This document shows, in pieces, positions 1 to 25,259 of a stretch of DNA of 37,205 nucleotides. The stretch lies in contig RQSC01000030.1 of assembly GCA_013416795.1 (NCBI GenBank), positions 316,079 to 353,283 of the forward strand. Reading direction: 5' to 3'. The translations under genes were made by a program, and so were the position numbers. This stretch comes from Prasinococcaceae sp. CCMP 1430. Taxonomy: Eukaryota; Plantae; Prasinodermophyta. The notes beneath the pieces are model-generated. The model was not told where the DNA came from, ran no database searches, and saw nothing but the letters and a program-made list of their open reading frames with translations. The stretch's first letter is position 1. Every line of letters begins with the position of its first letter.

Positions 1-2
1 CG

Positions 3-934
3 GGCGCGCCCGCCGGCGGCCCGCCGGCGCCCCTCGACTCGCTCGCGCTGGTGCAGCACCCGCCGACGTACACGCTGGGGACGGGCTCGACGCTCGAGCA
101 CGTGCGCTTCGACCCGTCGGCGCCGCCGCACGGCGCGGCCGTGTACCGCGTGGAGCGCGGCGGCGAGGTGACGTACCACGGCCCCGGCCAGCTGGTGCTC
201 TACCCGGTGCTCGACCTGCGCCGCTACGAGCGCGACCTGCACTGGTACATGCGCCAGCTCGAGGAGGTGGTGATCCGCGCGCTGCGCGACGGCGCGGGCA
301 TCGCCGACGCGCGCCGCGTGGACGGCCTGACCGGCGTGTGGGTGGGCGACGCCAAGGTGGCGGCGTGCGGCGTGCGCGTGCGGCGCTGGGTGGCCTTCCA
401 CGGCGTGGCGCTCAACGTGGCGCCCGACATGCGCCACTTCGAGGACATCGTGCCGTGCGGCATCGGCGACCGGCCCGTGTGCTCCGTGGAGGGCGTGCTC
501 GCCGCCCGAGGCGCGGCGGCCGGGGGGGCGTCGCCGACGGAGGGCGACGCGCTGCGCGACGCGCTCGCCGACGCGCTGCTGCGCGCGTTCGAGGAGGTCT
601 TCGGCGCGGAGCTCGTCGGCGCCGANNNNNNNNNNNNNNNNNNNNNNNNNNNNNNNNNNNNNNNNNNNNNNNNNNNNNNNNNNNNNNNNNNNNNNNNNNN
701 NNNNNNNNNNNNNNNNNNNNNNNNNNNNNNNNNNNNNNNNNNNNNNNNNNNNNNNNNNNNNNNNNNNNNNNNNNNNNNNNNNNNNNNNNNNNNNNNNNNN
801 NNNNNNNNNNNNNNNNNNNNNNNNNNNNNNNNNNNNNNNNNNNNNNNNNNTTCGACGGCGCGGACGCCGAAGGCGCGGCGCGCGAGGGGGCGGTGGCGGC
901 GCGCGGCGCCCGAGCGAGCGCGGGAGGGGGATGA
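3..934 (+). CDS. lipB: Lipoyl(octanoyl) transferase LipB/LIP2, 5' partial and interrupted by N-gap 625-850
   Basis: Frame is open from the window start: DSLALVQHPPTYTLG, RVERGGEVTYHGPGQLVLYP, GVWVGDAKVAACGVRVRRWVAFHGVALNV, FEDIVPCG are LipB signature motifs. The 3' end after the gap (stop at 934 in another frame) is uncertain. Confidence 0.9.
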   Translation, partial: RARRRPAGAPRLARAGAAPADVHAGDGLDARARALRPVGAAARRGRVPRGARRRGDVPRPRPAGALPGARPAPLRARPALVHAPARGGGDPRAARRRGHRRRAPRGRPDRRVGGRRQGGGVRRARAALGGLPRRGAQRGARHAPLRGHRAVRHRRPARVLRGGRARRPRRGGRGGVADGGRRAARRARRRAAARVRGGLRRGARRRRXXXXXXXXXXXXXXXXXXXXXXXXXXXXXXXXXXXXXXXXXXXXXXXXXXXXXXXXXXXXXXXXXXXXXXXXXXXFDGADAEGAAREGAVAARGARASAGGG

Positions 935-984
935 ACGACGAGGAAGGGGGGCGATGATGATGACGACGGGGACGTCGAAGGGGG

Positions 985-1018
985 GTGTTGTTGTTGTTGT
1001 TGTTGTTGTTGTGTGTGT
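985..1018 (+). repeat. (GTT)n/(GT)n microsatellite downstream of lipB
   Basis: Direct reading: gtgttgttgttgttgttgttgttgttgtgtgtgtg. Confidence 0.8.
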
Positions 1019-1194
1019 GGGGGGGTGGCGGTGGACGGCGGGCGGCAGAGGTGTGTAGTACATCAATAGACTCCTTTAGGTAATAGAACTCTACAGTAGT
1101 ACTACTTGGTGGTACGCAGCTGCCCGCCCCCCCCCTCTTCCCGACCTTCATCCACACACGCGCGCCCGCCCGGCCTGCTCGCCGGCGTCGCCGC

Positions 1195-1665
1195 TCAGCG
1201 CAGGTGCGCCCGCAGCGTGCGCTGCGTCGCGCGGCGCACCCTGCAGCGGATCGTCTCGAGGCCGAGCCGCTGGTGCGCCTCGTAGCGGTGGCAGCCCGAG
1301 AATCCGTAGTAGAGGTAGCCCTCGCCAGCCTCGTTCTCCACCTCGAGGACGTCTTGTTTCGTGCCGCCGTCGCGTGCGTGCGTGGGTGGGTGGGCGGGTG
1401 CGTGGGTGCGTGGGTGGGTGGGTGGGTGGGGAGTGAGCGGGAGTCCGCGCGCGCGAGCGCGCCACAGAGGGCGCGCGCGAGCGGGTGGAGGAGGGCGGGG
1501 GCGCGCGGGGCGGCCGCGGCGTACCGATGGGCTCCTGCAGGCCAATCTCGGCGATGCTCTCCATGAGCCACTTGACCTTGGCGGCGTCGTTGGCGCGCGT
1601 GCGCGCGAGCGGCCTGCGGATCGCCGCGACGGGCAGCTCGCGCACCTCGGCCGCCATCTCCTCCT
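1195..1665 (-). CDS. SRX: Sulfiredoxin, plant/algal type; exons 1525-1665 and 1195-1352; 5' end in N-gap, possible first exon 2291-2401
   Basis: Splicing the GT-AG intron 1353-1524 (ATC G|gtacgc ... aacaag|AC) gives GLQEPIDVLEV...YYGFSGCHRYEAHQRLGLETIRCRVRR, containing the catalytic FSGCHR motif. Confidence 0.92.
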   Translation of the reverse strand, partial: RRRWRPRCASCPSRRSAGRSRARAPTTPPRSSGSWRASPRLACRSPSVRRGRPARPRPPPPARARPLWRARARGLPLTPHPPTHPRTHAPAHPPTHARDGGTKQDVLEVENEAGEGYLYYGFSGCHRYEAHQRLGLETIRCRVRRATQRTLRAHLR

Positions 1666-2804
1666 NNNNNNNNNNNNNNNNNNNNNNNNNNNNNNNNNNN
1701 NNNNNNNNNNNNNNNNNNNNNNNNNNNNNNNNNNNNNNNNNNNNNNNNNNNNNNNNNNNNNNNNNNNNNNNNNNNNNNNNNNNNNNNNNNNNNNNNNNNN
1801 NNNNNNNNNNNNNNNNNNNNNNNNNNNNNNNNNNNNNNNNNNNNNNNNNNNNNNNNNNNNNNNNNNNNNNNNNNNNNNNNNNNNNNNNNNNNNNNNNNNN
1901 NNNNNNNNNNNNNNNNNNNNNNNNNNNNNNNNNNNNNNNNNNNNNNNNNNNNNNNNNNNNNNNNNNNNNNNNNNNNNNNNNNNNNNNNNNNNNNNNNNNN
2001 NNNNNNNNNNNNNNNNNNNNNNNNNNNNNNNNNNNNNNNNNNNNNNNNNNNNNNNNNNNNNNNNNNNNNNNNNNNNNNNNNNNNNNNNNNNNNNNNNNNN
2101 NNNNNNNNNNNNNNNNNNNNNNNNNNNNNNNNNNNNNNNNNNNNNNNNNNNNNNNNNNNNNNNNNNNNNNNNNNNNNNNNNNNNNNNNNNNNNNNNNNNN
2201 NNNNNNNNNNNNNNNNNNNNNNNNNNNNNNNNNNNNNNNNNNNNNNNNNNNNNNNNNNNNNNNNNNNNNNNNNNNNNNNNNNNNNNNNNNGGCGGCGGCG
2301 CCGTCGGCGGCGCCCGCCTCCGCCTCTGCGCGCGCCGCGCGCGCCTCCGCTCGTTTTCGCGCGACGCGGAGCGCGTTTAGGTTCAATCGTTTGGGTTTCA
2401 TAGTCAGGGTCCAATATAGGGTCCAAAATGCATGTAAATGCTACTGAACGTACTGTAAAAAGCTTTTTTACACTGCACTGTACTTCGAACTCGCACCAAC
2501 GCGCGCGAAGGCACGGAGAAAAGCCCGCACAAAGGTGTACGTACGTACGTACGTACACCACCACCACCCGAGCTCATTTAGGTTTGATAATTGAGGTTTG
2601 AATATGTAGGGTTCCCAAAAAAAATCGCACGGATTCGCGACGGCGCGCGCCGAATCCCGTGAAACCGGGCGTCGAAGGGTGCGGCGCGCGCGGCCCGGCG
2701 CGCGCGGGCGTCCGCGGAATTCGAAGCGCGCGCGCGCGGGCCTCTCGAAGCCGCGCGAGTGCGGTGTGATGGGCCGGGCGCCCCGAGCTGGACCGCCCGG
2801 GCGC

Positions 2805-3022
2805 ATCAAAATAATATTCCGTAAAAAACTTTCACGGTGCTGTAAATAAAAGTATGAAATACGCGGAAGCAACGAAAAAAGAGTGGCCATTTTGGGAGGT
2901 AGGACTCTCTCGAAATCAAAATAATATTACGTAAAAAAATTTCACGGTGCTGAAAATAAAGTATGAAATACGCGGAAGCAACGGAAAAGAGCGGCCACTT
3001 TCGGGAGGTTTGACTCTCTCTC
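2805..3022. repeat. Diverged tandem duplication of a ~110-bp AT-rich unit (copies start at 2805 and 2915)
   Basis: Both copies read atcaaaataatatt(c/a)cgtaaaaaa...ttcacggtgctg...gtatgaaatacgcggaagcaacg...gag(t/c)ggcca...gggagg...gactctctc. Confidence 0.9.
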
Positions 3023-3200
3023 TCGCGCGCCCCTGGAGAGGCGCGGCGCGGCGCGTGGAGCCGCGCGAGGTGCGCCCCGTCTGGGAGACCATGGACGGGC
3101 GGGAGGCGCGCGGGCCGCTGAGGCCGTACGACGCGTGCTGGGCGGGATGCTGACTGAAGAAGCTGGGGGGGGGAGCATCCGTGATGGTAGAGGAGAGGAA

Positions 3201-3485
3201 ATGAATTGCCTCAACCGCGCGCTCGACCTATTCAACACGGCCGTGGTGAGCCCCACATAGTACGTGCTCGTCACCACGCTGAGCGTCCTCGCCGAGGCCA
3301 TCATGTGCGGCGAGCTGGGCGGGCTGGGCGGCGTGCGGAAGCTGGGCGAGCTCAGCGGCTTCACCACCGTCCTCGTCGGCGTCTTCCTGCTGCGGGGGTG
3401 TAGAAAGGACGAGAGCGCGGAGAAGCTGCTGAGCGAGCTCAGCGGCCTCCTGCCTGCGCGCCGGCAAGAGAGCCAGATGCCCTGA
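3201..3485 (+). pseudogene. NIPA-family magnesium transporter C-terminal fragment with an in-frame stop
   Basis: MNCLNRALDLFNTAVVSPT*YVLVTTLSVLAEAIM...ELSGFTTVLVGVFLL matches the NIPA motif QMNYLNKALDxFNTAVVSPIYYV...ELCGFxTxLxGxFLL. TAG at 3258-3260 replaces a Tyr. No upstream NIPA sequence is recognisable. Confidence 0.75.
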
Positions 3486-3567
3486 CGCGCTCGGGGTGTG
3501 GGGGGGCTTCGAGCGGTTGGGGAAGGCGGTCCACGCGCGGCCGCCGCGGGTGCGAGGGCGCTTGGTA

Positions 3568-3619
<52 letters not shown>

Positions 3620-3677
3620 CGCGGCCCTGTAGTCTACACACACCTGTACTGTAACATGCTCAAGAAAACGCACTCGA

Positions 3678-4045
3678 CTAACCGGAGGTGTGCGCGCGTC
3701 TGAGCAGCGCCGCGGCGGCCCCGACGCGGTCATGCGCGTCCCACCGGTGGGCAGATTCCTCGGCGAGTTGGAGCGCCGTGCGGCCGTCGGCATTGCGGGC
3801 GGATGCGTCGGCGCCCGCCTCGAGCAGCACCAGCACGCAGTCGGCGGAGCCGCGTCTGCCGGCGCGGTGCAAGGGTGTGTTGCCCTCGACGTCAGCCTTC
3901 TCAATGTCGGCGCCCGCCTCGAGCAGCAGCCGCACGCAGTCGGGAGAGTCCCAGCCAGCTGCGAAGTGAAGAGGCGTCTCGCCGTCCACATTAGCCTTGT
4001 CCTTTTCGGCGCCCGCCTCGAGCAGCAGTCGCACGCAGTCGGCGC
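3678..4045 (-). CDS. Ankyrin-repeat protein fragment (about 3 repeats), 5' end missing
   Basis: DCVRLLLEAGAEKDKANVDGETPLHFAA, DCVRLLLEAGADIEKADVEGNTPLHRA, GRTALQLAE. The supplied ORF has no in-frame ATG. Confidence 0.75.
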
Positions 4046-4186
4046 TGCTGCCTTCTGCTCCCGGGGCGCACTTTTTTGTCGGCCACAAAAAAGTCACGCG
4101 TCGCCCGCGCCGCGTCGCGCTCTCTTTGCGCGCGCGCGAAAAGAGCGCCGCTGTCACATCGCGCGCGCACGAGCGAGCAAAAGAGC

Positions 4187-4192
4187 AAAAAA
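4187..4192 (-). terminator. RNA polymerase III oligo-T terminator (T6)
   Basis: AAAAAA on + at 4187-4192, i.e. TTTTTT 5 nt after the tRNA discriminator on the - strand. Confidence 0.7.
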
Positions 4193-4197
4193 GTGTT

Positions 4198-4314
4198 TGA
4201 TCAATACCGGGTTTTCGTGCACTCGAACCGATGGCCTTGCTTAACTTGTCACGTGAAATACACGTGCGTAAAGAGTTATTAGCTCCACGCTCTAACCAAC
4301 TGAGCTAATCGATC
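4198..4314 (-). tRNA. trnI-AAT: tRNA-Ile(AAT) with two non-canonical introns (41/42: 4240-4272; 59/60: 4212-4221)
   Basis: After removing both introns (74 nt remain): acceptor GATCGAT/ATTGATC plus discriminator A, D arm GCTC-AGTTGGTTA-GAGC, anticodon arm TGGAG-CTAATAA-CTCCA, variable AGGCC, T arm ATCGG-TTCGAGC-CCGGT. Confidence 0.88.
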
Positions 4315-4941
4315 AAGCCTGTGCGCTCGCGAAAATTGGAGCTCATCAACGTATGTGTCAAAATGCCGGCAAGGATCGCGGCCGCTCCGCTTCGACCGCC
4401 CTGCGCACGCACTCTGCCTGCCCCCCGCAGCGCTCGGCGCGGCGCAGGCGCCCGCCCGCGGAGGGGGCCGCCGATCCCATCGGATCCGATCCGCCCTTCT
4501 CGGCGTGGAAGGCACAGCCTCCATCGAAGAGGGCTCGCTCATCGTCCGCACGACGGGTCGCCTCCAGCCAGCAGCCCGAGAAATTCTTTCAGGTAGCCTT
4601 TTACCACAAAAGGGTTTACAGCACGCGAGATGGATGGGCCGCGCGGCGCACCACCGCTGGCGCCGCTCGATGGCGGACGCGGGGGTCCGGGGGGGGAACG
4701 CCCGCCACAACCGCCACACCCGCCCCCCTCCCCCTCCCCCTTTCCTCCCCCACCCCACGTACTCCCCAACCCCCCCCTCGCGCGCTCCTGAGCTCGCTCG
4801 CACGCCTCCGACGCCCAGCCCGCTCCACGCCTGGGCGAAGGAGAGCGCGAGGACCGAGCCACGCCCCCACTTCCCCCGTCGACGACAGCGACGACGACAC
4901 CGTCGACGACCACCCCCCCCCCCACCCACACACCCACACAA

Positions 4942-6496
4942 CCTCCGACGTTCGAGGACGTGTCCACCGCGGCGTTCCGCATCCGCGAGCGCACCGCGCG
5001 CACGCACTGCCACCGGTCGGAGGCGCTCTCCGCGGCGACGGGCGTCGAGCTGTACCTCAAGCACGAGCACAAGCAGCGCACGGGGAGCTTCAAGGAGCGG
5101 GGCGCGTGCTACGCGCTGCTGACCCTCTCCGCGGAGGAGCGCGGGGCGGGCATCACCGCGGCGTCGGCCGGCAACCACGCGCTCGCCCTGGCCGCGCACG
5201 CGGGCGCGCTCGGGCTGGAGGCGCACGTGGTGATGCCGACGACGGCCCCCCTCACCAAGATCGCGCGCTGCCGCTCGCTGGGCGCGGACGTGGTGCTCCA
5301 CGGCGAGACCATCGCCGACGCCGCCGAGTACGCGCGCGAGCACTTCGTGTCGCGCGGCTGCAAGTACGTCAACGGCTTCGACGACCCGGCGATCATCGCG
5401 GGCGCGGGCACCGTCGGGCTGGAGCTCCTGGAGCAGGTGAAGGACCTGGACTACATCGTCGTGCCGGCCGGCGGGGGGGGGCTGCTGGCGGGCATCCTGC
5501 TGGCGGCCAAGACGCTCGCCCCGGCCGTCAAGGTGGTCGGCGTGGAGCCCGAGCGCTGCGCGAGCCTGTCGGCGGCCCTCGCGGCCGGCGAGCCCACGCT
5601 GCTGGAGGTGCCGGGGCCGACGCTCGCCGACGGCCTCGCCGTGCCGTGCGTGGGGCCCACCTCCTTCGAGGTCATCCGGCCGCTCGTCGACGACGTGGTC
5701 ACCGTGTCCGAGCAGGTGAGGGAAAAGCGCGCGCCCCCATCGGGCTCCTTGCGGGGCGGGATGGCAGTGCGGACGAGGGGCGAGGAGGAGCCCCCTCCCC
5801 ATGCCCCTTACCCCCCCCCCGTTCCCGCCCATGGCGCGAGAGTCTGACGACGACGGGCGCCGTGGCCTCCGCGCCACCCTTCCCACACACACACACACCC
5901 TCTCTCTTGGCTCGCCGGCGCCACGCAGGACATCGCCGTCGCGGTCTTGCGGCTGATGGAGACCGAGCGCATCGTGCAGGAGGGCGCCGGCGCGGCGGGC
6001 CTGGCGGCGGTGCTCGCCGGCCGCATTCCGGGGCTCGCGGGCAAGAGGGTGGGCGTGCCGCTCTGCGGCGCGAACATCGACAGCACGGTGCTCGGGCGCG
6101 TGATCGACCGCGCGCTGGTGTACGACTCGCGCCTCGTGCGCTTCAGCGCGGTGGTCTCCGACAGGTGCGCGCGCGCGACGCCGACCGCTGGCCGCCGACC
6201 GCTGGCCGCTGGCCGCTGGCCGCTGAGCGCTGGCCGCTGAGCGCTGACCGCCGAGCGCTCGCCGCTGAAGGCCCGGGGGCATCGCCGAGCTCACGGCCGT
6301 GATCGCCAAGGCGGGCGCATCGGTCAAGGACATCTACCACGAGAGGTCGTGGCTGCAGTACGACCCGGTGCACGCGGTGGAGTGCGTGCTCTCGGTGGAG
6401 CTCACCGGGCCGGAGCACAAGGTCAAGCTGCGCGAGGCGATGCAGGCGGCCATCGATTCGAAGAGGGTGCACTCGTGGGGTAACATCAAGCTGTAG
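4942..6496 (+). CDS. Threonine/serine dehydratase (PLP-dependent) with C-terminal ACT domain; exons ~4942-5715, 5929-6164, 6271-6496; 5' exon unresolved (candidate ATG 4670)
   Basis: Motifs LYLKHEHKQRTGSFKERGA, ASAGNHA, NGFDDPAIIAGAGTVGLE, VPAGGGGL, TLADGLAV, EGAGAAGLAA, LCGANID. GT-AG introns 5716-5928 and 6165-6270 keep the frame and give SDRPGGIAELTAVIAKAGASVKDIYHER (ACT). Confidence 0.9.
6186..6250 (+). repeat. Heptamer tandem repeat (GCTGGCC/GCTGAGC/GCTGACC) in the last dehydratase intron
   Basis: Direct reading: gctggccgctggccgctggccgctgagcgctggccgctgagcgctgacc. Confidence 0.8.
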
Positions 6497-7793: not shown

Positions 7794-7989
7794 CTGCGAG
7801 ATCCGCGCGGGCGCGCCCGTCAGCGGCGANATGCGCGCGCGCCCCCCGCGCGCGCGCGGCGGGCGGCGCCAGTGCGGCGACACGGCGCGACAAGGGGGTT
7901 AAGGGGGCAGCCTCCACCCCACCCCAGCCCCACCCCCTCGCTCGTCGGCCGCCGCCCCCGACGCGCGCGCGCTCGTCGTACAGGCGACG

Positions 7990-9255
7990 ATGGCCCACGC
8001 GGGCGGCGGCAGCGGAGGAGCGGGAGGAGCGGGAGGAGCGGGAGGCTCAGGCGACGCGCCGCGGCGCGCGCGCAAGGCGCTGCTGCTGGCCACGCAGGCG
8101 CTCGGCGCGATGGGCGAGGCGTGGGCGGAGCGCGATGCCCTCAGGGACGAGATCCAATGGGCCAGAGAGATAAGGTGCCACGGAGCGACCGAGCGAGCTG
8201 GCGCGACGGACGCCCCGCGCGCCGCGGACCGCGGCGCCGGCAACCGGGCGCTGCTTCCGGATGCCCCTCCTTGCGCGGCGTCGGCGGAGCGCGCGCACCA
8301 GGCGCTGCTACTGGTCACGCAGGCATTGGGCGTGAGCGCCGACGCCGTGCGGGAGGCGCGCGCCGAGCGCGACGCGGCCCAGGAGGAGCACGACCGGTGC
8401 ATAGAGGCTCTACACGGGGAGCTGTTACTCTGGCATGCGGTCAGGGACGGCGCGGATATCGCCCTCCGGAACGCGCTGTCGCGCGGCGCGAATGCGGACG
8501 CAGAGATCGTTGCGGGCCCCTACACGCTGTCGAACGCCACGTACTGGCAATATCAGAGCATAGGGTTTGCTGGCACCGCCCTGGGCCTCGCGGCGCGCGA
8601 GGGCAGCCTCGGCTGCCTGCGGCTGCTGCTCGCTGCCGGCGCCGACAGGGACAAGGCGGACCGCCTCAGAGGCTGGACGCCCCTGCATCGCGCGGCTCGG
8701 AGCCGGAGGGCGGACTCGCTGCGGCTGCTGATTGAGGCGGGCGCCGACGTGGACAAGGCCAACCTCGACGGGTCGACGCCCCTGCATCAGGCGGCCAAGC
8801 GCGACAGCGCCGAGTGCCTGCGGCCGCTGCTGGAGGCCGGCGCCGACGTGGACAAGCCAAACAGCGGCGGGTCGACAGCGCTGCACCACGCAGCGTTGCG
8901 CGAAAACGCCGAATGCCTGCGGGCGCTGCTGGAGGCCGGCGCCGACGTGGACAAGGCCAACCGACACGGGTGCACGCCCTTGCATCACGCGGCGGCGCGC
9001 GACAGCGACGACTGCCTGCGGCTGCTGCTCGAGGCCGGCGCCGACGAGCACAGGGCGGCCTTCGACGGCTCGACGCCGCTGCACCACGCGGCGCGGTACG
9101 GCGGCGCGGACTGCGTGCGGCTGCTGCTCGAGGCCGGCGCCGTCGCGTCCGCTTGCGACGATTTCGGCGACACGCCGCTCGACCTCGCCGAACGCAACAA
9201 GCACAAGGAGGCCGCAGCGCTGCTGCGCCCGTATGCCGCCCCCGGCGCGCCGTAG
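7990..9255 (+). CDS. Ankyrin-repeat protein (about 7 repeats) with a helical N-terminal region
   Basis: Repeated G.TPLH.AA......C.RLLLEAGAD.DKAN units; ATG in GCGACGATGGCC context; single ORF. Confidence 0.9.
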   Translation: MAHAGGGSGGAGGAGGAGGSGDAPRRARKALLLATQALGAMGEAWAERDALRDEIQWAREIRCHGATERAGATDAPRAADRGAGNRALLPDAPPCAASAERAHQALLLVTQALGVSADAVREARAERDAAQEEHDRCIEALHGELLLWHAVRDGADIALRNALSRGANADAEIVAGPYTLSNATYWQYQSIGFAGTALGLAAREGSLGCLRLLLAAGADRDKADRLRGWTPLHRAARSRRADSLRLLIEAGADVDKANLDGSTPLHQAAKRDSAECLRPLLEAGADVDKPNSGGSTALHHAALRENAECLRALLEAGADVDKANRHGCTPLHHAAARDSDDCLRLLLEAGADEHRAAFDGSTPLHHAARYGGADCVRLLLEAGAVASACDDFGDTPLDLAERNKHKEAAALLRPYAAPGAP

Positions 9256-10329
9256 ACGGGCCGAGCCCGTCGAGGAGCCGCCCGCACGCGCCCGCAACGC
9301 CATAAACGCGCGTGTAGTACAGTACAGAATGTGTGTCCCATGGTGATGCACGGCGCCCTCCCGTGCGATTGGACGCGCTCACGTGCGTTTTGACGTGGCT
9401 ATGCCCGTGCGTGCGATGTGACACGCCGCTTCTTTTCGATCTTTCGGTTGCAGTTCTCGAACTGTCTTTCTCTCTGGCGCGCGTGTTCGACCGCCCCCAG
9501 ACGCCGAGAGAGCGCCTCCGTGCGAGCTCGCCTCCTGCACGACGAAGATACAGTTCAATGGACGGACGCACGCACGCGCATGCAGTAGATTTAGATTTGC
9601 CACCTGCCCGTATCACACACAGCTAACTGGCACCCATCAGATTTGGATACGCGCGGCGCATCGGATAACGCCATCAGAACGAAGGCGCGCGGCGCGCGGC
9701 GCGCGCGAGCGAGCGCGAACGCGCGGCGAGGCCGGAAGGGGCGCGGGGGGGGGAGGGAGGCGCAGCAGCAGCGCTCCCTCCCCCCCTTCCCCCTCCTCCC
9801 GACAACAAAAACAACAACAGCGTCGCCTCTCGGTGCCACACAGCGCCCGCGCGCCGTGCGCCACCGGCGGGCGAGGGCCGGCGGCGTGCGCGTCCGCCGG
9901 GCGGAGCAGTGTCAGACCACCCATTCCACTCGCGCGCGTGCGCCAGGCGCTCTGCCACCCTGCCGCCCTCTTTGCCCTCCCGTCAGCCCGCGGTGCCGCC
10001 GCGCCCACGGATGAGCGCTCCGCAGCAGCCGCCCAAATCTGGATTTGGATTTCGCCGAGCGCGGCAAGCTGACGGCGACGCGTTTGTGCCGTGGCCGCCC
10101 CGAGCAGCCAGGCCTGAGATCGCCGTGCTGACCCTCGGCAGAGGTTGGGATGGCGCCGCGGCCGCACACGTTTCGGGCGCCGCGGGCGTGCGGGGTGGGT
10201 CTCGTGGGCCGACTGCATTGGGTAGCGCGGCGGCTGCCTGGACAGGTACATGCGCTATTACTCTGCATCAGTGTCGTCAGCAACGGGTGCGGGTAGCGAA
10301 AGTTGCGGAAGGCAGAATTACAGTCACTA

Positions 10330-12948
10330 CTACCGAATGGTACCGCCCGCAACGGAGGACGTGCACGGTCCCTTAGAAGTGCCAAAGCCCACGCCCTTGT
10401 ACTGGGCCACGCCGCCCGCGTCGGTCTTGAGCTCAGGCTGCACTGCGTCCCACTGCTTTTTCTTGGGATTGAGCACCTCGTCCGGCTCGCCCGCATAGCC
10501 CTCGAATGCCACGCGCTCGCCGGGCTCGACGCCTTCTGGTGGTATCACAAAGTCCACGGTCGCGCCATCTTCGCTCGACGCGCAGAGCACCATGCCCTGC
10601 GAGGCGATCCCGCGCATCTTGCTCGTCTTGATGTTGGCGAGGACCAGCACGCGCGCGCCCATCATCTGCTCCTCAGTCTTGTGCTTGACGAGGCCCGATA
10701 CGATCGTGCGTGGTTCGTCCTCGCCTACGTCGATCTTCTCCACGTACAATGAGTCGGCATCAGGGTGACGCTTCACCTCGACAATCTTGCCCACCACGAT
10801 GTTGACTGCAGACACGTCCATGCGCGCGGGCGCGGGTTTGCCCTTACCCTTGCCCGTCGCAGCCGCAGGCTTGCCGTCCTTGCCCCCTTTCGCTGCCCCG
10901 GCGCCGCCCTTGCCCCCCTTCGAAGCGGCGGCCGTCGCAGCCTTCTTGTCGCTACCCGTCGCCGCAGTGCCCACCGCGCTGCGCGCCTTCTGGTCGCCTG
11001 CGAACTGAGCGCGGAAGTTGGCAACCTGCTCGTCGGTCATCTGCGAGAAGATGGGCGCGGGCGATCCCAGCGTGTGGCCCGCCTTGAGAAGCAGGTGTGG
11101 CCTCGTGCAGCGCTCGGCGAAGTCCGCGTCCCGCAGCGACAGGGGTCCGCCGGCCGCCAGCACCTCGCCAGAGTCAGCCTCGGCGAAGCCCAATTGGCCC
11201 ATCACCTTGCGCGTGAAGGACGGCATGAAGGGCGTCAGCATGGCGCACAGCACGGCCACGAGGCCCGCCGCCGCGGCGACCACCTCCTCACAGCGCGTCT
11301 TGTCAGTCTTGAAAAGCACCCACGGCGCAGTCTCCTGCAGAAAGGCGTTGCCGGCCTTGGAGACCAGCATTGCGACCTTGAGGCCGTCCTTGATGCGGAT
11401 TTTCTCCATGTTCTCGACGTACTCGGCCACCAGCGGCGCAATCTTCTCGCCGAGCGCGACACCGTCGGCCGAGTCGGCGGCAACCTGCGGCACGACGCCG
11501 CCCAGGCGCGCCTTCATGAAGGACAGCGCACGGTTGACAAAGTTGCCAAGGTTGGCCAGCAGCTCCGAGTTGTTCTTCATCGCTAGGTCGTCCCACACGA
11601 ACATCGAGTCCGCCGACTCGGGGCGGTTGACCAGGAGGTAGTAGCGCCACACCTCGGCGGGGATGCCCGTGGACTTGGCGTCATTGCCGAAGACGCCCAC
11701 GCCGCGCGACTTTGAGAACTTGCCGCCCTCGTAGTTGAGGTACTCGCACACCGAGATGGCGCGCATCATGGTCCAGTCCTCGCCGCTGCCCAGCAGGGTC
11801 GAGGGGAAGATCACGGTGTGGAAGGGGACGTTGTCCTTGCCCATGAACTGCACGAGCTCCACGTCGTTCTCCGCGGGATTCTTCCACCACTTCTCCCACT
11901 CGTCTGTGTACGCTGCTGTGATGGAAATGTAGCCGATGGGCGCGTCGAACCACACGTAGAACACCTTGTCTTCGTAGCCCTCCCGTGGCACAGGCGTGCC
12001 CCAACGCAGGTCGCGCGTGATGCAGCGCGTCTTCAGACCCTGCTTGAGCCACGAGTTGGTGACCGCCACGCAGTTGCTCGACCAATTGCCGCGTGTGGAG
12101 GCGTCCTTCACGTAGGCGTTGAGCTTGTCCTCCACGCGCGGCAGGTCGAGGAAGATGTGCTGCGTGGAACGCACCTCGGGCGTCTGGCCGTTGGCCTTGC
12201 AGCGCGGGTTGATGAGCTCGGTCGGGTTGAGCAGCGCGCCGCAATTGTCGCACTGGTCACCGCGCGCGTCCTCATATTTGCACTTGGGGCACGTCCCCTC
12301 CACCAGCCGGTCGGCGAGGAAGCCCACCGACTCGTGGTACAGCTGCTGTATCGTGTCCTCGTGCGTGTTGCCTGCCCTTTCGCACGCACGGAAGATGCCC
12401 TGGCAGATGTCCGACTGCGCGGGCGTCGAGGTGCGGCCGAACTCGTCGAACTCGATGCCGAACCACTCGTAGATGTCCTTGTGAATGGCATGGTACTTGT
12501 CGCAGATCTGTCGGCACGACAGCCCCTCCTCCATGGCCTTGGTCTGCGTGGCGGTGCCGTACTCGTCTGTGCCGCACACGTACACCGTGTTGTACCCACG
12601 CGCGCGGCAGAAGCGCGCGTAGACGTCCGCGCTCAGCACGCAGCCGATGATGTTGCCCAGATGCGGCACGTTGTTCACGTAGGGCAGCGCCGAGGTGATG
12701 AGCACGTTGCGCGCGCCCTTGACCGGAAGGCGCGGCGGCGTCACGCGCAGGCCCGCCGCTGCGCGCAAGCCGGCGGTGAGCGCCGCGGGGTCATCGCCAG
12801 CGGCCTTGAGCGCTGCGCGTGCTGCGGGCGAGCCGCCGACTGCCGCCGCCCACTTCGCGATGGCCGCCGGCAAGGCCACGCCAGAGGCGCCCGCCAGGCT
12901 CGCCCAGCAGCACAAGTCTGCAGCGCCCGGGGCGCCGCCGCCGCTCAA
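10330..12948 (-). CDS. MARS: Methionyl-tRNA synthetase (cytosolic type) with N-terminal GST-like helix and C-terminal EMAP-II/OB tRNA-binding domain; start unresolved
   Basis: ITSALPYVNNVPHLGNIIG (HIGH-type motif), CGTDEYGT, zinc knuckle CPKC...CDNCG, YVWFDAPIGY, FMGKDNVPFH, KFSKS, then VGKIVEVKRHPDADSLYVEKIDVGE...RTIVSGL. Confidence 0.96.
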   Translation of the reverse strand: MSGGGAPGAADLCCWASLAGASGVALPAAIAKWAAAVGGSPAARAALKAAGDDPAALTAGLRAAAGLRVTPPRLPVKGARNVLITSALPYVNNVPHLGNIIGCVLSADVYARFCRARGYNTVYVCGTDEYGTATQTKAMEEGLSCRQICDKYHAIHKDIYEWFGIEFDEFGRTSTPAQSDICQGIFRACERAGNTHEDTIQQLYHESVGFLADRLVEGTCPKCKYEDARGDQCDNCGALLNPTELINPRCKANGQTPEVRSTQHIFLDLPRVEDKLNAYVKDASTRGNWSSNCVAVTNSWLKQGLKTRCITRDLRWGTPVPREGYEDKVFYVWFDAPIGYISITAAYTDEWEKWWKNPAENDVELVQFMGKDNVPFHTVIFPSTLLGSGEDWTMMRAISVCEYLNYEGGKFSKSRGVGVFGNDAKSTGIPAEVWRYYLLVNRPESADSMFVWDDLAMKNNSELLANLGNFVNRALSFMKARLGGVVPQVAADSADGVALGEKIAPLVAEYVENMEKIRIKDGLKVAMLVSKAGNAFLQETAPWVLFKTDKTRCEEVVAAAAGLVAVLCAMLTPFMPSFTRKVMGQLGFAEADSGEVLAAGGPLSLRDADFAERCTRPHLLLKAGHTLGSPAPIFSQMTDEQVANFRAQFAGDQKARSAVGTAATGSDKKAATAAASKGGKGGAGAAKGGKDGKPAAATGKGKGKPAPARMDVSAVNIVVGKIVEVKRHPDADSLYVEKIDVGEDEPRTIVSGLVKHKTEEQMMGARVLVLANIKTSKMRGIASQGMVLCASSEDGATVDFVIPPEGVEPGERVAFEGYAGEPDEVLNPKKKQWDAVQPELKTDAGGVAQYKGVGFGTSKGPCTSSVAGGTIR

Positions 12949-24100: not shown

Positions 24101-25259
24101 GGTACGCTGATGTGATTGCAATGGCCTGCAGCGTCTTGCCAACCCCCATGTCATCGGCGATGAGGCACCTGCCGTGCCGGCGCAGGCCAAAGCGCACGCC
24201 GTCACACTGGAAGGGGAGCAGGCGTCGCCGCAAGTCCGGCGGGATACGCGCGAATGCGCTGGTGACCTCGCCCTCGGATGCAAGTCTCGTGGGTAGCTCA
24301 AGCAGCGCTGCGCGCACCCACGGGGGGCTAGCACTCACGACTTGCGCGGGCGGCCCTGGCGGTAGCGGCGTGCCCGGCGGCATGCCGTACATCCACGCGT
24401 CGATGGCACCTAGAGCGCCTTTGACTGTCTCCTCGTCCCGCAGGGCGAAGTGCAGTGCGTCTGGAGGCACTTCGCCGATATCTTCGCTACGGCACGCCGC
24501 ACTGCCCTCGAACGCGTCCGCAGGCGGCGAACACACGCGGACCCCACGTCTGTCAGCGAGTGCTGCGAGCACGGGCGCGAGTAGCATCGCGAGACCGCCA
24601 GCGTTCCTCACACTCTCTTCGGCGCCAGGTGCCGGGATGAGTCTGAATCGGTCCCTCGAGACGATCTCCTGCCAGAGGGAAATGCTATGCAATCCCTTTT
24701 GCTGCTGGTGGTATCCGTGGTGCGCAGTCGCACGAGACGTCGTCACCGCTGGCCTGAATGCTCGCGACTGGGGCGCCGACCCGCCGGCTGCAAGCCCGTT
24801 GAGGCCAGCGGGAGAACCCGTCGGTGTTCGTCCCGTGGGAGTCGAGCGCATACTTCGACCCCCGGTCGGGAGAGGCTGCGTCTGGATCGCACGCGGTCCT
24901 TGCTGTACATCGGTGATGAGCTGCGGCAACGCCTGCGCCGGCTGCTGCTGCTGCTGCTGCTGCTGCTGCGGCTGCTGGAATGTGTTTGAGCGCGCGACGG
25001 CAGGCTGTTGAATCGTCTCCGCCTGCACCTGCGCCGAGGCTTGCGGCGGCGGTGGCTGCTGTCGGGCTTGCGGTTGGGCCTGCAACGCCGCACGGCGTGC
25101 GAGAGCGGCGCGACGATTCGCATCCACGCGTGCGCGCTGCTCGAGGCTCAGCCCAACGTCGGGGCCTGCGCTCTCGCCACCGGCGCATACACCTGGCGCA
25201 CCAGCGCTTCCGCCGGCGCTCCTGTCGCCGTCGCCGGCGCACACCTCCGCCATCCGCAC
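21105..25259 (-). CDS. ZRANB3: DNA annealing helicase and endonuclease ZRANB3 (SNF2 helicase plus C-terminal HNH)
   Basis: LLPFQCDGV, IADDMGVGKTLQAI, IADESH, LSGTPALSRP, KIVVFAHH, RIDG, QAEDRAHRRG, and C-terminal WQADHIVPVFRGGGLCTVANMRTLCTPCH. Confidence 0.92.
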   Translation of the reverse strand: MRMAEVCAGDGDRSAGGSAGAPGVCAGGESAGPDVGLSLEQRARVDANRRAALARRAALQAQPQARQQPPPPQASAQVQAETIQQPAVARSNTFQQPQQQQQQQQQPAQALPQLITDVQQGPRAIQTQPLPTGGRSMRSTPTGRTPTGSPAGLNGLAAGGSAPQSRAFRPAVTTSRATAHHGYHQQQKGLHSISLWQEIVSRDRFRLIPAPGAEESVRNAGGLAMLLAPVLAALADRRGVRVCSPPADAFEGSAACRSEDIGEVPPDALHFALRDEETVKGALGAIDAWMYGMPPGTPLPPGPPAQVVSASPPWVRAALLELPTRLASEGEVTSAFARIPPDLRRRLLPFQCDGVRFGLRRHGRCLIADDMGVGKTLQAIAITSAYRHEGSVLVILPASLRLMWAEEIERWVPQLRPGDIHIVFGSEDRLSGLAHKPRAVITSYNMVQRLEAEMLATPWAVAIADESHALRTGSLSHGENKIVASVEKVLRKIPRVVMLSGTPALSRPYDLFVQAEVLWPQLLSNSKAAFANAYCERKLVRNGRYRQGFHYEMRGGQRLPELHALLRECIMIRRRKEEVLAELPPKRRQVVRLVCPEAEGMVTAADEVLMQMELYDPDAEPVWSQEHQLDGDGDGSRLSASQRRFRREGHFWQQLGLKKVNAVGEWLKGILDGSEESHKIVVFAHHHAVMDELQSGPIERCGVGFVRIDGTVPAAERQELVARFRSDPAVRVAILGIKSASTGLDFSSASAVVFAEIPEEAALLQQAEDRAHRRGVKSSVLVHILVARGSAEELRWQRLAQSMDMLQVVRSGETALEKGTMSIRIDAVVDHEEGAGADAARVAQDGVRGDLKLNFEASGDEDKPQARPTAPATALDGFCSQPLEPPAHLEGTAQVVPPVDGDVSASAAPLDSKGVVLTQMVAVAPPQPDLPSKPAAASGTDAPALWVEVSGHTGRLHLHHAADGSRPMHVNVLPQQALLEEPVAGCVTAQQAAAIQELPAPLCGSSSARAIVRELALEWRMLRAYDRRRLVGRLLQPPLTSELAALDAEEKAAARAAQSARVGGARSGGSRPVRHAGLADTAAEMPAGATVHTVRFTDQAAKVIEAEQPFSDAGTRLCVLCMSGYELPHARRPEAKLSCRAELFCSRACHLREREMACSAGLRNELRKLERGMCVLCKLDCVDLVRRLAAIRAPERGAERVAALARRRDIALRVAPQFAGTSSKKSLERLVASPVEGYAWQADHIVPVFRGGGLCTVANMRTLCTPCHANVTKEQAKQRADERRTARPKGQRRIDDVLKREQQRRREAAVAKGAAPETIDLLSDDGDVVDGGDSDEGGCQDSEGDDEELVLKLIGSDQDDFKDDVRGAAATHARQLRKRARRAR

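What the first reader, a model, noticed from the sequence alone, without database searches (positions are those of the whole stretch)
4198..4314. tRNA-Ile(AAT) split by two non-canonical, archaeal-style introns (41/42 and 59/60)
Seen in sequence: the unspliced gene has no usable anticodon stem or T-loop. Removing 4240-4272 and 4212-4221 gives a fully paired 74-nt cloverleaf (anticodon stem TGGAG/CTCCA, T-loop TTCGAGC), followed by a T6 terminator. Established: eukaryotic tRNA introns normally sit at 37/38. Multiple ectopic introns with bulge-helix-bulge-type motifs are known from archaea (Thermoproteales) and the red alga Cyanidioschyzon merolae, and permuted tRNAs from C. merolae and some prasinophytes. 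Inference: this alga has a broad-specificity splicing endonuclease and probably more hidden split or permuted tRNAs that standard annotation misses.
Basis: partly seen in the sequence, partly recalled or inferred. Interest (0 to 1): 0.88.

Follow-up and report, generated by a model that had tools for sequence, protein, structure and literature searches.

The report
Green-alga tRNA-Ile gene with two odd introns
A nuclear isoleucine tRNA gene of a GC-rich, deep-branching green alga is interrupted by two short inserts at unusual positions, each folding into the archaeal-type splice signal; such genes are known in red algae, and here splicing is predicted, not shown.

Summary
On the minus strand, 4314 to 4198 holds a tRNA-Ile(AAU) gene. 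ARAGORN and Rfam miss it at normal thresholds. After 4240-4272 (33 nt, position 41/42) and 4212-4221 (10 nt, position 59/60) are removed, ARAGORN calls a 74-nt tRNA-Ile(aat) cloverleaf.

Both inserts obey the bulge-helix-bulge (BHB) rule at the boundaries the cloverleaf requires. Each has a perfect 4-bp central helix, and each splice site lies two bases 3' of it. Shuffled inserts do this in 1.45e-4 of trials.

A Tara Oceans metagenome scaffold (L006) carries the same gene with both inserts. Its flanking coding DNA is about 94% identical. Only two bases differ, both at unpaired positions. So the inserts are not assembly errors.

Splicing itself could not be tested.

The host is probably Prasinoderma-like (inference). 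Ectopic BHB introns in nuclear tRNA genes are known from the red algae C. merolae and Chondrus and from nucleomorphs. The papers searched report none for a free-living green alga.

First-stage notes of this scan list at least six other such tRNA genes on other DNA of this genome; I did not check them.

Verdict: a new member of a known kind.

The parts
4273..4314 (-). Exon 1: tRNA positions 1-41 (acceptor 5' strand, D arm, anticodon stem 5' strand, anticodon loop with AAT, and the first 3 nt of the anticodon stem 3' strand).
4240..4272 (-). Intron 1: 33 nt at position 41/42, inside the anticodon stem 3' strand. Relaxed BHB of the HBh' type.
   Evidence: In L006 it is identical except nt 25, C to T.
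4222..4239 (-). Exon 2: tRNA positions 42-59 (last 2 nt of the anticodon stem, variable loop, T stem 5' strand, T-loop 54-59).
4212..4221 (-). Intron 2: 10 nt at position 59/60 in the T-loop. hBH / bulge-helix-loop type.
   Evidence: Identical in L006.
4198..4211 (-). Exon 3: tRNA positions 60-73 (T-loop 60, T stem 3' strand, acceptor 3' strand, discriminator A). No CCA is encoded.
4275..4278 (-). 5' strand of central helix H of BHB 1 (tRNA positions 36-39, TAAC).
   Evidence: It pairs 4/4 Watson-Crick with 4242-4245. The helix is present in the unconstrained MFE fold.
4242..4245 (-). 3' strand of central helix H of BHB 1 (intron 1 positions -6 to -3, GTTA). The 3' splice site lies 2 nt further on (AG|C).
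4250..4266 (-). Hairpin inside intron 1: a 6-bp stem made of two CACGTG palindromes with a 5-nt loop. It is the distal part of h'.
4224..4227 (-). 5' strand of central helix H of BHB 2 (T-loop positions 54-57, TTCG).
   Evidence: It pairs 4/4 Watson-Crick with 4214-4217. The helix is in the MFE fold, stacked on the T stem.
4214..4217 (-). 3' strand of central helix H of BHB 2 (intron 2 positions 5-8, CGAA). It is followed by the 3-nt bulge AA|C and then the T stem 3' strand.
4296..4307 (-). Intact A-box-like internal Pol III promoter element (tRNA positions 8-19).
   Evidence: Read from the sequence. The consensus is recalled from established knowledge.
4219..4229 (-). B-box-like element in the genomic DNA: positions 52-59 plus the first 3 nt of intron 2. 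I read it as matching 10 of 11 positions of the GGTTCGANTCC consensus.
   Evidence: One search prints the region. The consensus is from my own knowledge. Its function here is inferred.
4187..4192 (-). T6 run, a Pol III terminator 5 nt after the discriminator. A second T4 run lies at 4179-4182. The run is T7 in L006.

Best explanation
This is a functional nuclear gene for cytosolic tRNA-Ile(AAU), whose A34 would be deaminated to inosine.

Proposed mechanism (inferred):
- RNA polymerase III transcribes it as a precursor of about 125 nt, ending at the T6 run.
- The precursor carries two protein-spliced introns.
- Intron 1 (33 nt, position 41/42) presents a relaxed BHB motif of the HBh' type. Positions 36-39 pair with intron positions -6 to -3. 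The 5' splice site sits in a UC|U bulge closed by a short h' helix and a 6-bp hairpin. The 3' splice site (AG|C) lies two bases 3' of the helix.
- Intron 2 (10 nt, position 59/60) presents an hBH / bulge-helix-loop motif. The T stem is the outer helix. T-loop bases 54-57 pair with intron bases 5-8. The 3' site sits in an AA|C bulge and the 5' site in a 6-nt loop.
- The tRNA splicing endonuclease (Sen2/Sen34 catalytic subunits) cuts all four sites by BHB recognition, independently of position. A tRNA ligase then joins the three exons. RNase P, tRNase Z and the CCA-adding enzyme finish the ends.

Shown here: the gene, the exact boundaries, the BHB geometry and conservation in a wild relative.

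Inferred: transcription, cleavage, ligation and the identity of the enzymes.
For: - ARAGORN calls tRNA-Ile(aat) only after both inserts are removed.
- By my reading of the spliced sequence, the invariant positions fit: U8, A14, G18G19, U33, G53, T54-T55-C56, A58, C61 and the G15-C48 pair.
- Both central helices are 4/4 Watson-Crick at exactly the prescribed offsets, P = 1.45e-4 under shuffling.
- The unconstrained MFE fold contains both helices, and contains T stem + H + 3-nt bulge for intron 2.
- The geometry rule agrees with the description in PMC4090602 and with the motif types listed for C. merolae in PMC3728597.
- The independent Tara scaffold L006 has 93.6% identical flanking coding DNA and the same gene with both inserts. 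Only two substitutions occur in 117 nt: D-loop position 20a, and intron 1 nt 25, which is unpaired and in L006 would add an A-U pair to h'.
- A T6 terminator is present, and the A box is intact.
- Ile codons in three window genes are 37 ATC, 6 ATT and 5 ATA, so an AUC-reading tRNA is needed.
- An AAT anticodon for Ile is a eukaryotic cytosolic feature (established knowledge).
Against:
- Intron 1 lacks the outer helix h, and its h' is only 2 A-U pairs in the window, so the motif is relaxed.
- The acceptor stem is weak for a 70% GC genome: 2 G-C, 4 A-U and 1 G-U pairs.
- Intron 2, at 10 nt, is one base shorter than the shortest introns quoted for archaea and C. merolae (11 nt).
- It is unknown whether intron-free Ile(AAT) copies exist elsewhere in the genome.
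- The more distant relatives (L001, L007, L008) have no syntenic copy, so no compensatory changes are available.
Confidence: 0.8

Rival explanations
1. It is a tRNA pseudogene or decaying copy. An Ile(AAT) gene picked up two insertions and is no longer processed into a working tRNA. Other, intact copies do the work.
For: Reviews note that short insertions in the D or T arms of eukaryotic tRNA genes are usually read as pseudogenes when many synonymous copies exist (PMC4090602). There is no expression evidence here. The acceptor stem is weak and AU-rich. The outer helix h is missing at intron 1.
Against: Random insertions would not place perfect 4-bp helices at the exact BHB offsets at both sites (1.45e-4). 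No exon base breaks a stem or an invariant position. The terminator is intact. Both inserts are preserved with no disruptive change in a lineage whose neighbouring coding DNA has diverged by about 6%. First-stage notes list several other tRNA species in this genome with ectopic inserts (unchecked). That is hard to explain by decay alone.
Confidence: 0.12
2. Only the 33-nt insert is an intron. The 10-nt T-loop insert is handled differently: it stays in the mature RNA as an enlarged T-loop, or it is removed by another activity.
For: Ten nt is below the shortest protein-spliced introns quoted for archaea and C. merolae. Very short nucleomorph inserts of 3 nt are excised by an unknown mechanism.
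Against: The insert forms a textbook hBH motif (T stem + 4 bp + 3-nt bulge), the commonest form of eukaryotic tRNA intron. A 17-nt T-loop would destroy the T-loop/D-loop elbow. T-loop introns at 58/59 or 59/60 are documented and validated elsewhere.
Confidence: 0.03
3. It is an artefact: the inserts are assembly or sequencing errors, or the cloverleaf is a chance resemblance.
For: The window has N runs and single Ns elsewhere.
Against: An independent Tara Oceans metagenome assembly carries the same inserts, base for base apart from one substitution. Eighteen coded runs that the tool guesses to be DNA hold 88-94% of the sampled words of 2900-6400. By my own rough estimate, the joint probability of a complete cloverleaf plus two BHB motifs in random sequence is of the order of 1e-9.
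Confidence: 0.01

Closest known systems
[quoted passage not shown] 2013, PMC3728597)
   Same: Nuclear genes with one to three short introns (11-69 bp) at ectopic positions, including the T-loop. BHB motifs occur in strict and relaxed forms (hBHBh', hBH, HBh'). Introns can interrupt the A or B box. An upstream AT-rich patch and a T-run terminator are present.
   Different: The host is a green-lineage alga, not a red alga. An intron inside the anticodon stem (41/42) is not among the C. merolae positions listed (D stem, D loop, variable arm, T stem, T loop, 37/38). The 10-nt intron is one base shorter than their minimum. Here the B box is largely preserved by the intron's first bases, so ordinary TFIIIC-dependent transcription is not excluded. 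No permutation is seen.
D-loop and T-loop introns of Chondrus crispus nuclear tRNA genes (Cognat et al., PlantRNA 2.0, doi 10.1101/2021.12.21.473619)
   Same: tRNAscan-type tools call the genes pseudogenes or miss them. Some genes have T-loop introns and some have two introns. [quoted passage not shown]
   Different: In Chondrus the T-loop intron is always at 58/59 and the second intron is the canonical 37/38 one. Here the sites are 59/60 and 41/42, and nothing is validated experimentally.
Multiple-intron tRNA genes of Crenarchaeota / Thermoproteales
   Same: BHB-defined introns at many positions, 59/60 among them. Several introns can sit in one gene. hBH and HBh' forms act as independent splice-site entities.
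   Different: [quoted passage not shown] This gene has AAU, no CCA, a Pol III T-run and eukaryotic nuclear neighbours. The archaeal intron minimum quoted is 11 nt.
Nucleomorph tRNA introns (Guillardia theta, Bigelowiella natans)
   Same: [quoted passage not shown] A gene can hold two or three introns, and the introns are very short (3-24 nt).
   Different: Those sit in reduced endosymbiont nuclei. This gene lies in a 70% GC nuclear region beside ordinary nuclear genes.
Permuted tRNA genes of Mamiellales green algae (Maruyama et al. 2010)
   Same: BHB-dependent processing in a green-lineage nuclear genome.
   Different: The exons here are collinear, not permuted. The host is not a mamiellalean: no named MetRS relative exceeds 62% identity.
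Canonical eukaryotic tRNA intron at 37/38
   Same: The relaxed hBH architecture (a 3-nt bulge at the 3' site, a 4-bp helix that includes exon bases) and presumably the same enzymes.
   Different: The position. The ruler mechanism, which measures from the mature domain, cannot place cuts at 41/42 or 59/60 (established knowledge).

Membership tests
Protein-spliced BHB-type tRNA intron (archaeal/eukaryal endonuclease substrate) | Removing the insert restores a canonical cloverleaf with the invariant nucleotides. | tested here: met
   ARAGORN calls tRNA-Ile(aat), 74 nt, only after both deletions.
Protein-spliced BHB-type tRNA intron (archaeal/eukaryal endonuclease substrate) | A central 4-bp helix H between the 5' exon (positions -6 to -3) and the intron (positions -6 to -3). 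| tested here: met
   TAAC/GTTA for intron 1 and TTCG/CGAA for intron 2, both 4/4 Watson-Crick. Shuffle P = 0.007 and 0.016 singly, 1.45e-4 jointly. Both helices are in the MFE fold.
Protein-spliced BHB-type tRNA intron (archaeal/eukaryal endonuclease substrate) | Two 3-nt bulges flanked by outer helices h and h' (strict hBHBh'). | tested here: not met
   Intron 2 has h (the T stem) and the 3' bulge AA|C, but its 5' site lies in a 6-nt loop (hBH/BHL). Intron 1 has the 5' bulge UC|U with a 2-bp h' plus hairpin, but no outer helix h at the 3' site (HBh'). Both are relaxed forms accepted in archaea and C. merolae. So the strict form fails and the relaxed form is met.
Protein-spliced BHB-type tRNA intron (archaeal/eukaryal endonuclease substrate) | The mature spliced tRNA exists in the cell. 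| not testable with these tools
Protein-spliced BHB-type tRNA intron (archaeal/eukaryal endonuclease substrate) | The genome encodes a splicing endonuclease (Sen2/Sen34) and a tRNA ligase. | not tested
   These lie outside the window. No first-stage note mentions Sen2, Sen34 or Sen54, and I had no query sequence to search with.
C. merolae-type highly disrupted nuclear tRNA gene set | Many tRNA species of the genome carry ectopic and/or multiple introns. | not tested
   Only unchecked first-stage notes point this way: Glu-CUC, Ile-UAU, Val-AAC, Leu-AAG, Lys-CUU and Phe on other pieces of the genome. The rest of this window holds no other tRNA-like match.
Nuclear Pol III tRNA gene | An A box, a B box and an oligo-T terminator. 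| tested here: met
   The A box at 4296-4307 is intact. The genomic B-box region at 4219-4229 matches 10 of 11 consensus positions because the intron starts with TGC. T6 lies at 4187-4192. The consensus sequences are from my own knowledge.
Permuted or split tRNA gene | [quoted passage not shown] | tested here: not met
   The three exons are collinear within 117 nt on one strand.
Group I, group II or spliceosomal intron | A ribozyme core of hundreds of nt, or GT...AG boundaries with a branch site. | tested here: not met
   The inserts are 33 and 10 nt. They begin TT and TG. Rfam finds no intron family there.

The most novel reading that the evidence does not exclude
The host belongs to the deepest branch of green plants (Prasinoderma-like, Prasinodermophyta). 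Its nuclear tRNA set is disrupted genome-wide in the C. merolae manner, with ectopic and multiple BHB introns, including positions not listed for nuclear genes such as 41/42 inside the anticodon stem. Position-independent, BHB-driven tRNA splicing would then be present in early branches of both the red and the green lineages. That would make it a candidate ancestral trait of Archaeplastida rather than a red-algal oddity.
Probability: 0.3. Interest if true: 0.7.

Novelty: new member of a known kind. Interest (0 to 1): 0.55.

Why it matters
Standard tRNA finders miss this gene, which probably encodes the only kind of tRNA that reads the dominant Ile codon AUC. Annotations of this genome likely under-count essential tRNAs.

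If splicing is confirmed, it adds a free-living green-lineage nuclear genome to the short list of eukaryotes with ectopic tRNA introns: C. merolae, Chondrus and the nucleomorphs. That bears directly on an open question restated in a 2026 review (PMC13578239): are such architectures ancestral retentions or independent gains?

It also offers a tractable substrate for testing how a eukaryotic endonuclease picks sites without the anticodon-arm ruler. One precursor holds two minimal motifs, HBh' and hBH, one of them only 10 nt long.

Tried and rejected
- **Reads.** Rfam was rerun only on 1-4190 and 4320-37205, DNA patterns were taken from 4198-4239 only, and those letters were compared only inside the closed script machine.
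- **Synteny through MetRS.** The nearest relative, at 77% identity, sits on Tara contig L001, which has no tRNA.
- **Exact-ORF look-ups** of 4353-6302(+) and 2942-3991(-): not on record. These ORFs are not the true frames.
- **Metagenome pattern scans.** The first gave 0 hits. The second gave 4 hits, all chance matches without tRNA context.
- **More distant PALP-gene relatives** L007/L008 (69% identity): no syntenic tRNA, and an A-box-like match there is not a tRNA.
- **Foreign or viral island.** I suspected one from the apparent low GC of 1-4000, but that is caused by N runs at 626-850 and 1666-2290.
- **Downstream neighbour** (3678-4157, minus strand): it is an ankyrin-repeat exon, useless for synteny searches.
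- **Other hidden tRNAs in the window:** none found.
- **Literature.** No paper in the library links Prasinoderma with tRNA introns. The genome paper's main text does not discuss nuclear tRNA genes.

Full report
**What is in the sequence.** The feature lies on the minus strand, from 4314 down to 4198. Neither ARAGORN nor Rfam at gathering thresholds reports any tRNA in the 37-kb window. In permissive mode, the Rfam tRNA model gives a sub-threshold 23.3 bits (cut-off 29) over 4225-4314(-). The 5' half aligns well and the 3' end is forced wrongly. ARAGORN then calls a 74-nt tRNA-Ile(aat) with a 7-bp acceptor stem, a 4-bp D stem, a 5-bp anticodon stem, a 5-bp T stem and the T-loop TTCGAGC. Deleting only one insert gives no intron-free tRNA. 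The D-loop has 9 nt, so the 42-nt first exon ends at standard position 41 and the 18-nt second exon ends at position 59. The labels 41/42 and 59/60 are therefore right.

**Test for the splice signal.** The BHB motif is a 4-bp helix flanked by two 3-nt bulges that hold the splice sites. At the canonical intron, the first two anticodon bases are part of that helix (PMC4090602). This fixes the geometry. The last two exon bases plus the first intron base form the 5' bulge. Exon positions -6 to -3 pair with intron positions -6 to -3. The last two intron bases plus the first base of the next exon form the 3' bulge. The placement of the cut within each bulge is my own reading of that description together with recalled structural work.

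- *Intron 1.* Positions 36-39 (TAAC) pair perfectly with GTTA at intron -6 to -3. The 5' bulge is UC|U and the 3' site is AG|C. Intron bases 2-3 pair with bases 27-26, followed by a 6-bp hairpin built from two CACGTG palindromes. There is no outer helix on the exon side. This is the relaxed HBh' form.
- *Intron 2.* T-loop bases 54-57 (TTCG) pair perfectly with CGAA at intron bases 5-8, stacked directly on the 5-bp T stem. The 3' site lies in a 3-nt bulge AA|C and the 5' site in a 6-nt loop. This is the hBH (bulge-helix-loop) form, the commonest shape of nuclear tRNA introns (PMC3728597).

The hand-drawn structure contains only standard pairs and evaluates to -22.2 kcal/mol. The unconstrained minimum-energy fold (-29.9 kcal/mol) contains both central helices on its own.

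**More than chance.**
- The 41/42 boundary cannot slide, because the bases on either side differ.
- The T-loop boundary has three formal options, and only the proposed one gives a 3-nt bulge.
- Across 200,000 shuffles of the two inserts, a perfect Watson-Crick helix at the prescribed offset appeared in 0.7% of trials for intron 1 and 1.6% for intron 2. Both appeared together in 1.45e-4 of trials, or 4.1e-4 when G-U pairs are allowed.

So two independent requirements, the cloverleaf and the BHB rule, select the same four cut sites.

**Not an assembly error, and conserved in the wild.** The true neighbour on the plus strand is a PALP-family, threonine-ammonia-lyase-like gene (the 4960-5847 frame has third-position GC of 0.97). 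Its 98% identical homologue lies on a 3.9-kb Tara Oceans metagenome scaffold, L006. The coding DNA of L006 is 93.6% identical to the window. L006 carries the same tRNA gene at 290-406 on its minus strand, with both inserts at the same places and lengths. Within the 117 nt there are two differences:
- D-loop position 20a (window 4294), T to C.
- Intron 1 base 25 (window 4248), C to T. This base is unpaired in the window and in L006 could add an A-U pair to h'.

A third change just downstream lengthens the T-run to T7. Nothing touches either central helix or a bulge. This refutes the assembly-error outcome and shows that the inserts persist in a diverged natural population. With only one intron substitution, it is not covariation evidence. 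More distant relatives (L001, L007, L008) have no syntenic tRNA. Two metagenome pattern scans gave nothing useful.

**What could not be tested.** Splicing itself could not be tested. Eighteen runs that the tool guesses to be DNA and two guessed to be RNA hold the surrounding 3.5 kb. The tool states that this filter is no evidence of anything, and I draw nothing from it.

**Host and context.**
- Outside its N runs the window is about 70% GC.
- Its single-exon MetRS has one 77% relative, on a Tara contig. All named green algae and land plants reach only about 53-62% identity, with chlorophytes and streptophytes about equally distant.
- A first-stage note on another piece of the genome reports a trans-spliced group I intron in an LSU rRNA gene. 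That is the published hallmark of the Prasinoderma coloniale mitochondrion (PMC3873408, listed).
- The P. coloniale genome is 69.8% GC (PMC7455551).

I infer a Prasinoderma-like alga, but this is not proven. The gene is nuclear: it sits between a PALP gene and an ankyrin-repeat exon. An AAT anticodon for Ile is a eukaryotic cytosolic trait (established knowledge). Ile codons in three window genes are 37 ATC, 6 ATT and 5 ATA, so an inosine-bearing Ile tRNA is needed.

**Likely mechanism (inferred).** Pol III transcribes from the intact A box at 4296-4307. The B box is cut by intron 2 after position 59, but the intron begins TGC. By my reading, the genomic sequence at 4219-4229 therefore still matches 10 of 11 consensus positions. 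The A-to-B spacing grows to about 66 bp, which I recall as tolerated. Ordinary TFIIIC-dependent transcription therefore remains possible, unlike the proposal for C. merolae. The splicing endonuclease would cut the four sites by BHB recognition and a ligase would join the exons. From memory, vertebrate and yeast enzymes can cut BHB substrates independently of the mature domain (Fabbri et al. 1998). A novel enzyme is therefore not required.

**Comparison with what is known.** Ectopic and multiple BHB introns in nuclear tRNA genes are established in several places:
- C. merolae: 42 introns of 11-69 bp in the D stem, D loop, variable arm, T stem, T loop and at 37/38.
- Chondrus crispus: introns at 20/21 and 58/59, validated by RT-PCR.
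- The nucleomorphs.
- Many archaea, with 59/60 among their positions.

For green algae, the papers I read report permuted genes and long canonical introns in Mamiellales. [quoted passage not shown] No paper in the library links Prasinoderma to tRNA introns.

This gene is therefore a new member of a known kind, in a lineage where it appears unreported. It has two minor peculiarities: an intron inside the anticodon stem at 41/42, and a 10-nt intron one base below the quoted minima.

First-stage notes of this scan list six further tRNA genes of the same genome with ectopic introns: Glu-CUC, Ile-UAU, Val-AAC, Leu-AAG, Lys-CUU and Phe, the last also at 41/42. These are unchecked leads and I do not count them as support.

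**Verdict.** Splicing and the genome-wide extension remain to be shown. Interest is moderate (0.55). The finding is not a new mechanism. It would be a phylogenetically informative extension of the C. merolae-type tRNA architecture to the base of the green lineage.

Noticed in passing
window 626-850 and 1666-2290; single Ns at 7830, 14368 and 35858: Runs of N (225 and 625 bases) make the first 4 kb look low in GC. There is no real compositional island next to the tRNA.
   Followed up: yes
window about 4672-5847 (+); L006:931-2124: A PALP-family (threonine ammonia-lyase-like) gene is oriented divergently about 360 nt from the tRNA's 5' end. In the window the open frame starts only at 4960, whereas the 98% identical Tara homologue is a continuous 397 aa. 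The window copy may have an intron or an indel near its 5' end.
   Followed up: partly
window 10330-12948 (-): A single-exon cytosolic methionyl-tRNA synthetase with a C-terminal tRNA-binding (EMAP-like) domain. Its best non-self relative is only 77% identical, on a Tara Oceans contig whose gene neighbours differ (no synteny).
   Followed up: partly
window 4250-4266 (-), inside intron 1: The intron hairpin is built from two copies of the palindrome CACGTG (a G-box/E-box core) 5 nt apart. It is probably just a convenient self-complementary stem, and it is unchanged in L006.
   Followed up: no
window 4315-4420 (-), upstream of the tRNA: The 106 nt upstream of the gene differ from L006 at only 4 positions, including two AT-rich patches at about -52 to -27 and -23 to -14. 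The neighbouring coding DNA differs by about 6%. This may be an upstream Pol III promoter element.
   Followed up: no
window 9733-9801, both strands: A GC-rich palindromic hairpin gives weak sub-threshold matches to many unrelated miRNA precursor models (best 31.7 bits against a cut-off of 105). It is probably a generic hairpin.
   Followed up: no
window 24919-24983 (+): A sub-threshold Rfam match to the fungal sRNA family Afu_254 (42.9 bits, cut-off 60, E = 6e-4), inside long overlapping ORFs.
   Followed up: no
window 3678-4157 (-) and 7990-9255 (+): Two ankyrin-repeat coding stretches flank the tRNA/PALP pair. The first starts only about 40 nt downstream of the tRNA terminator region.
   Followed up: partly
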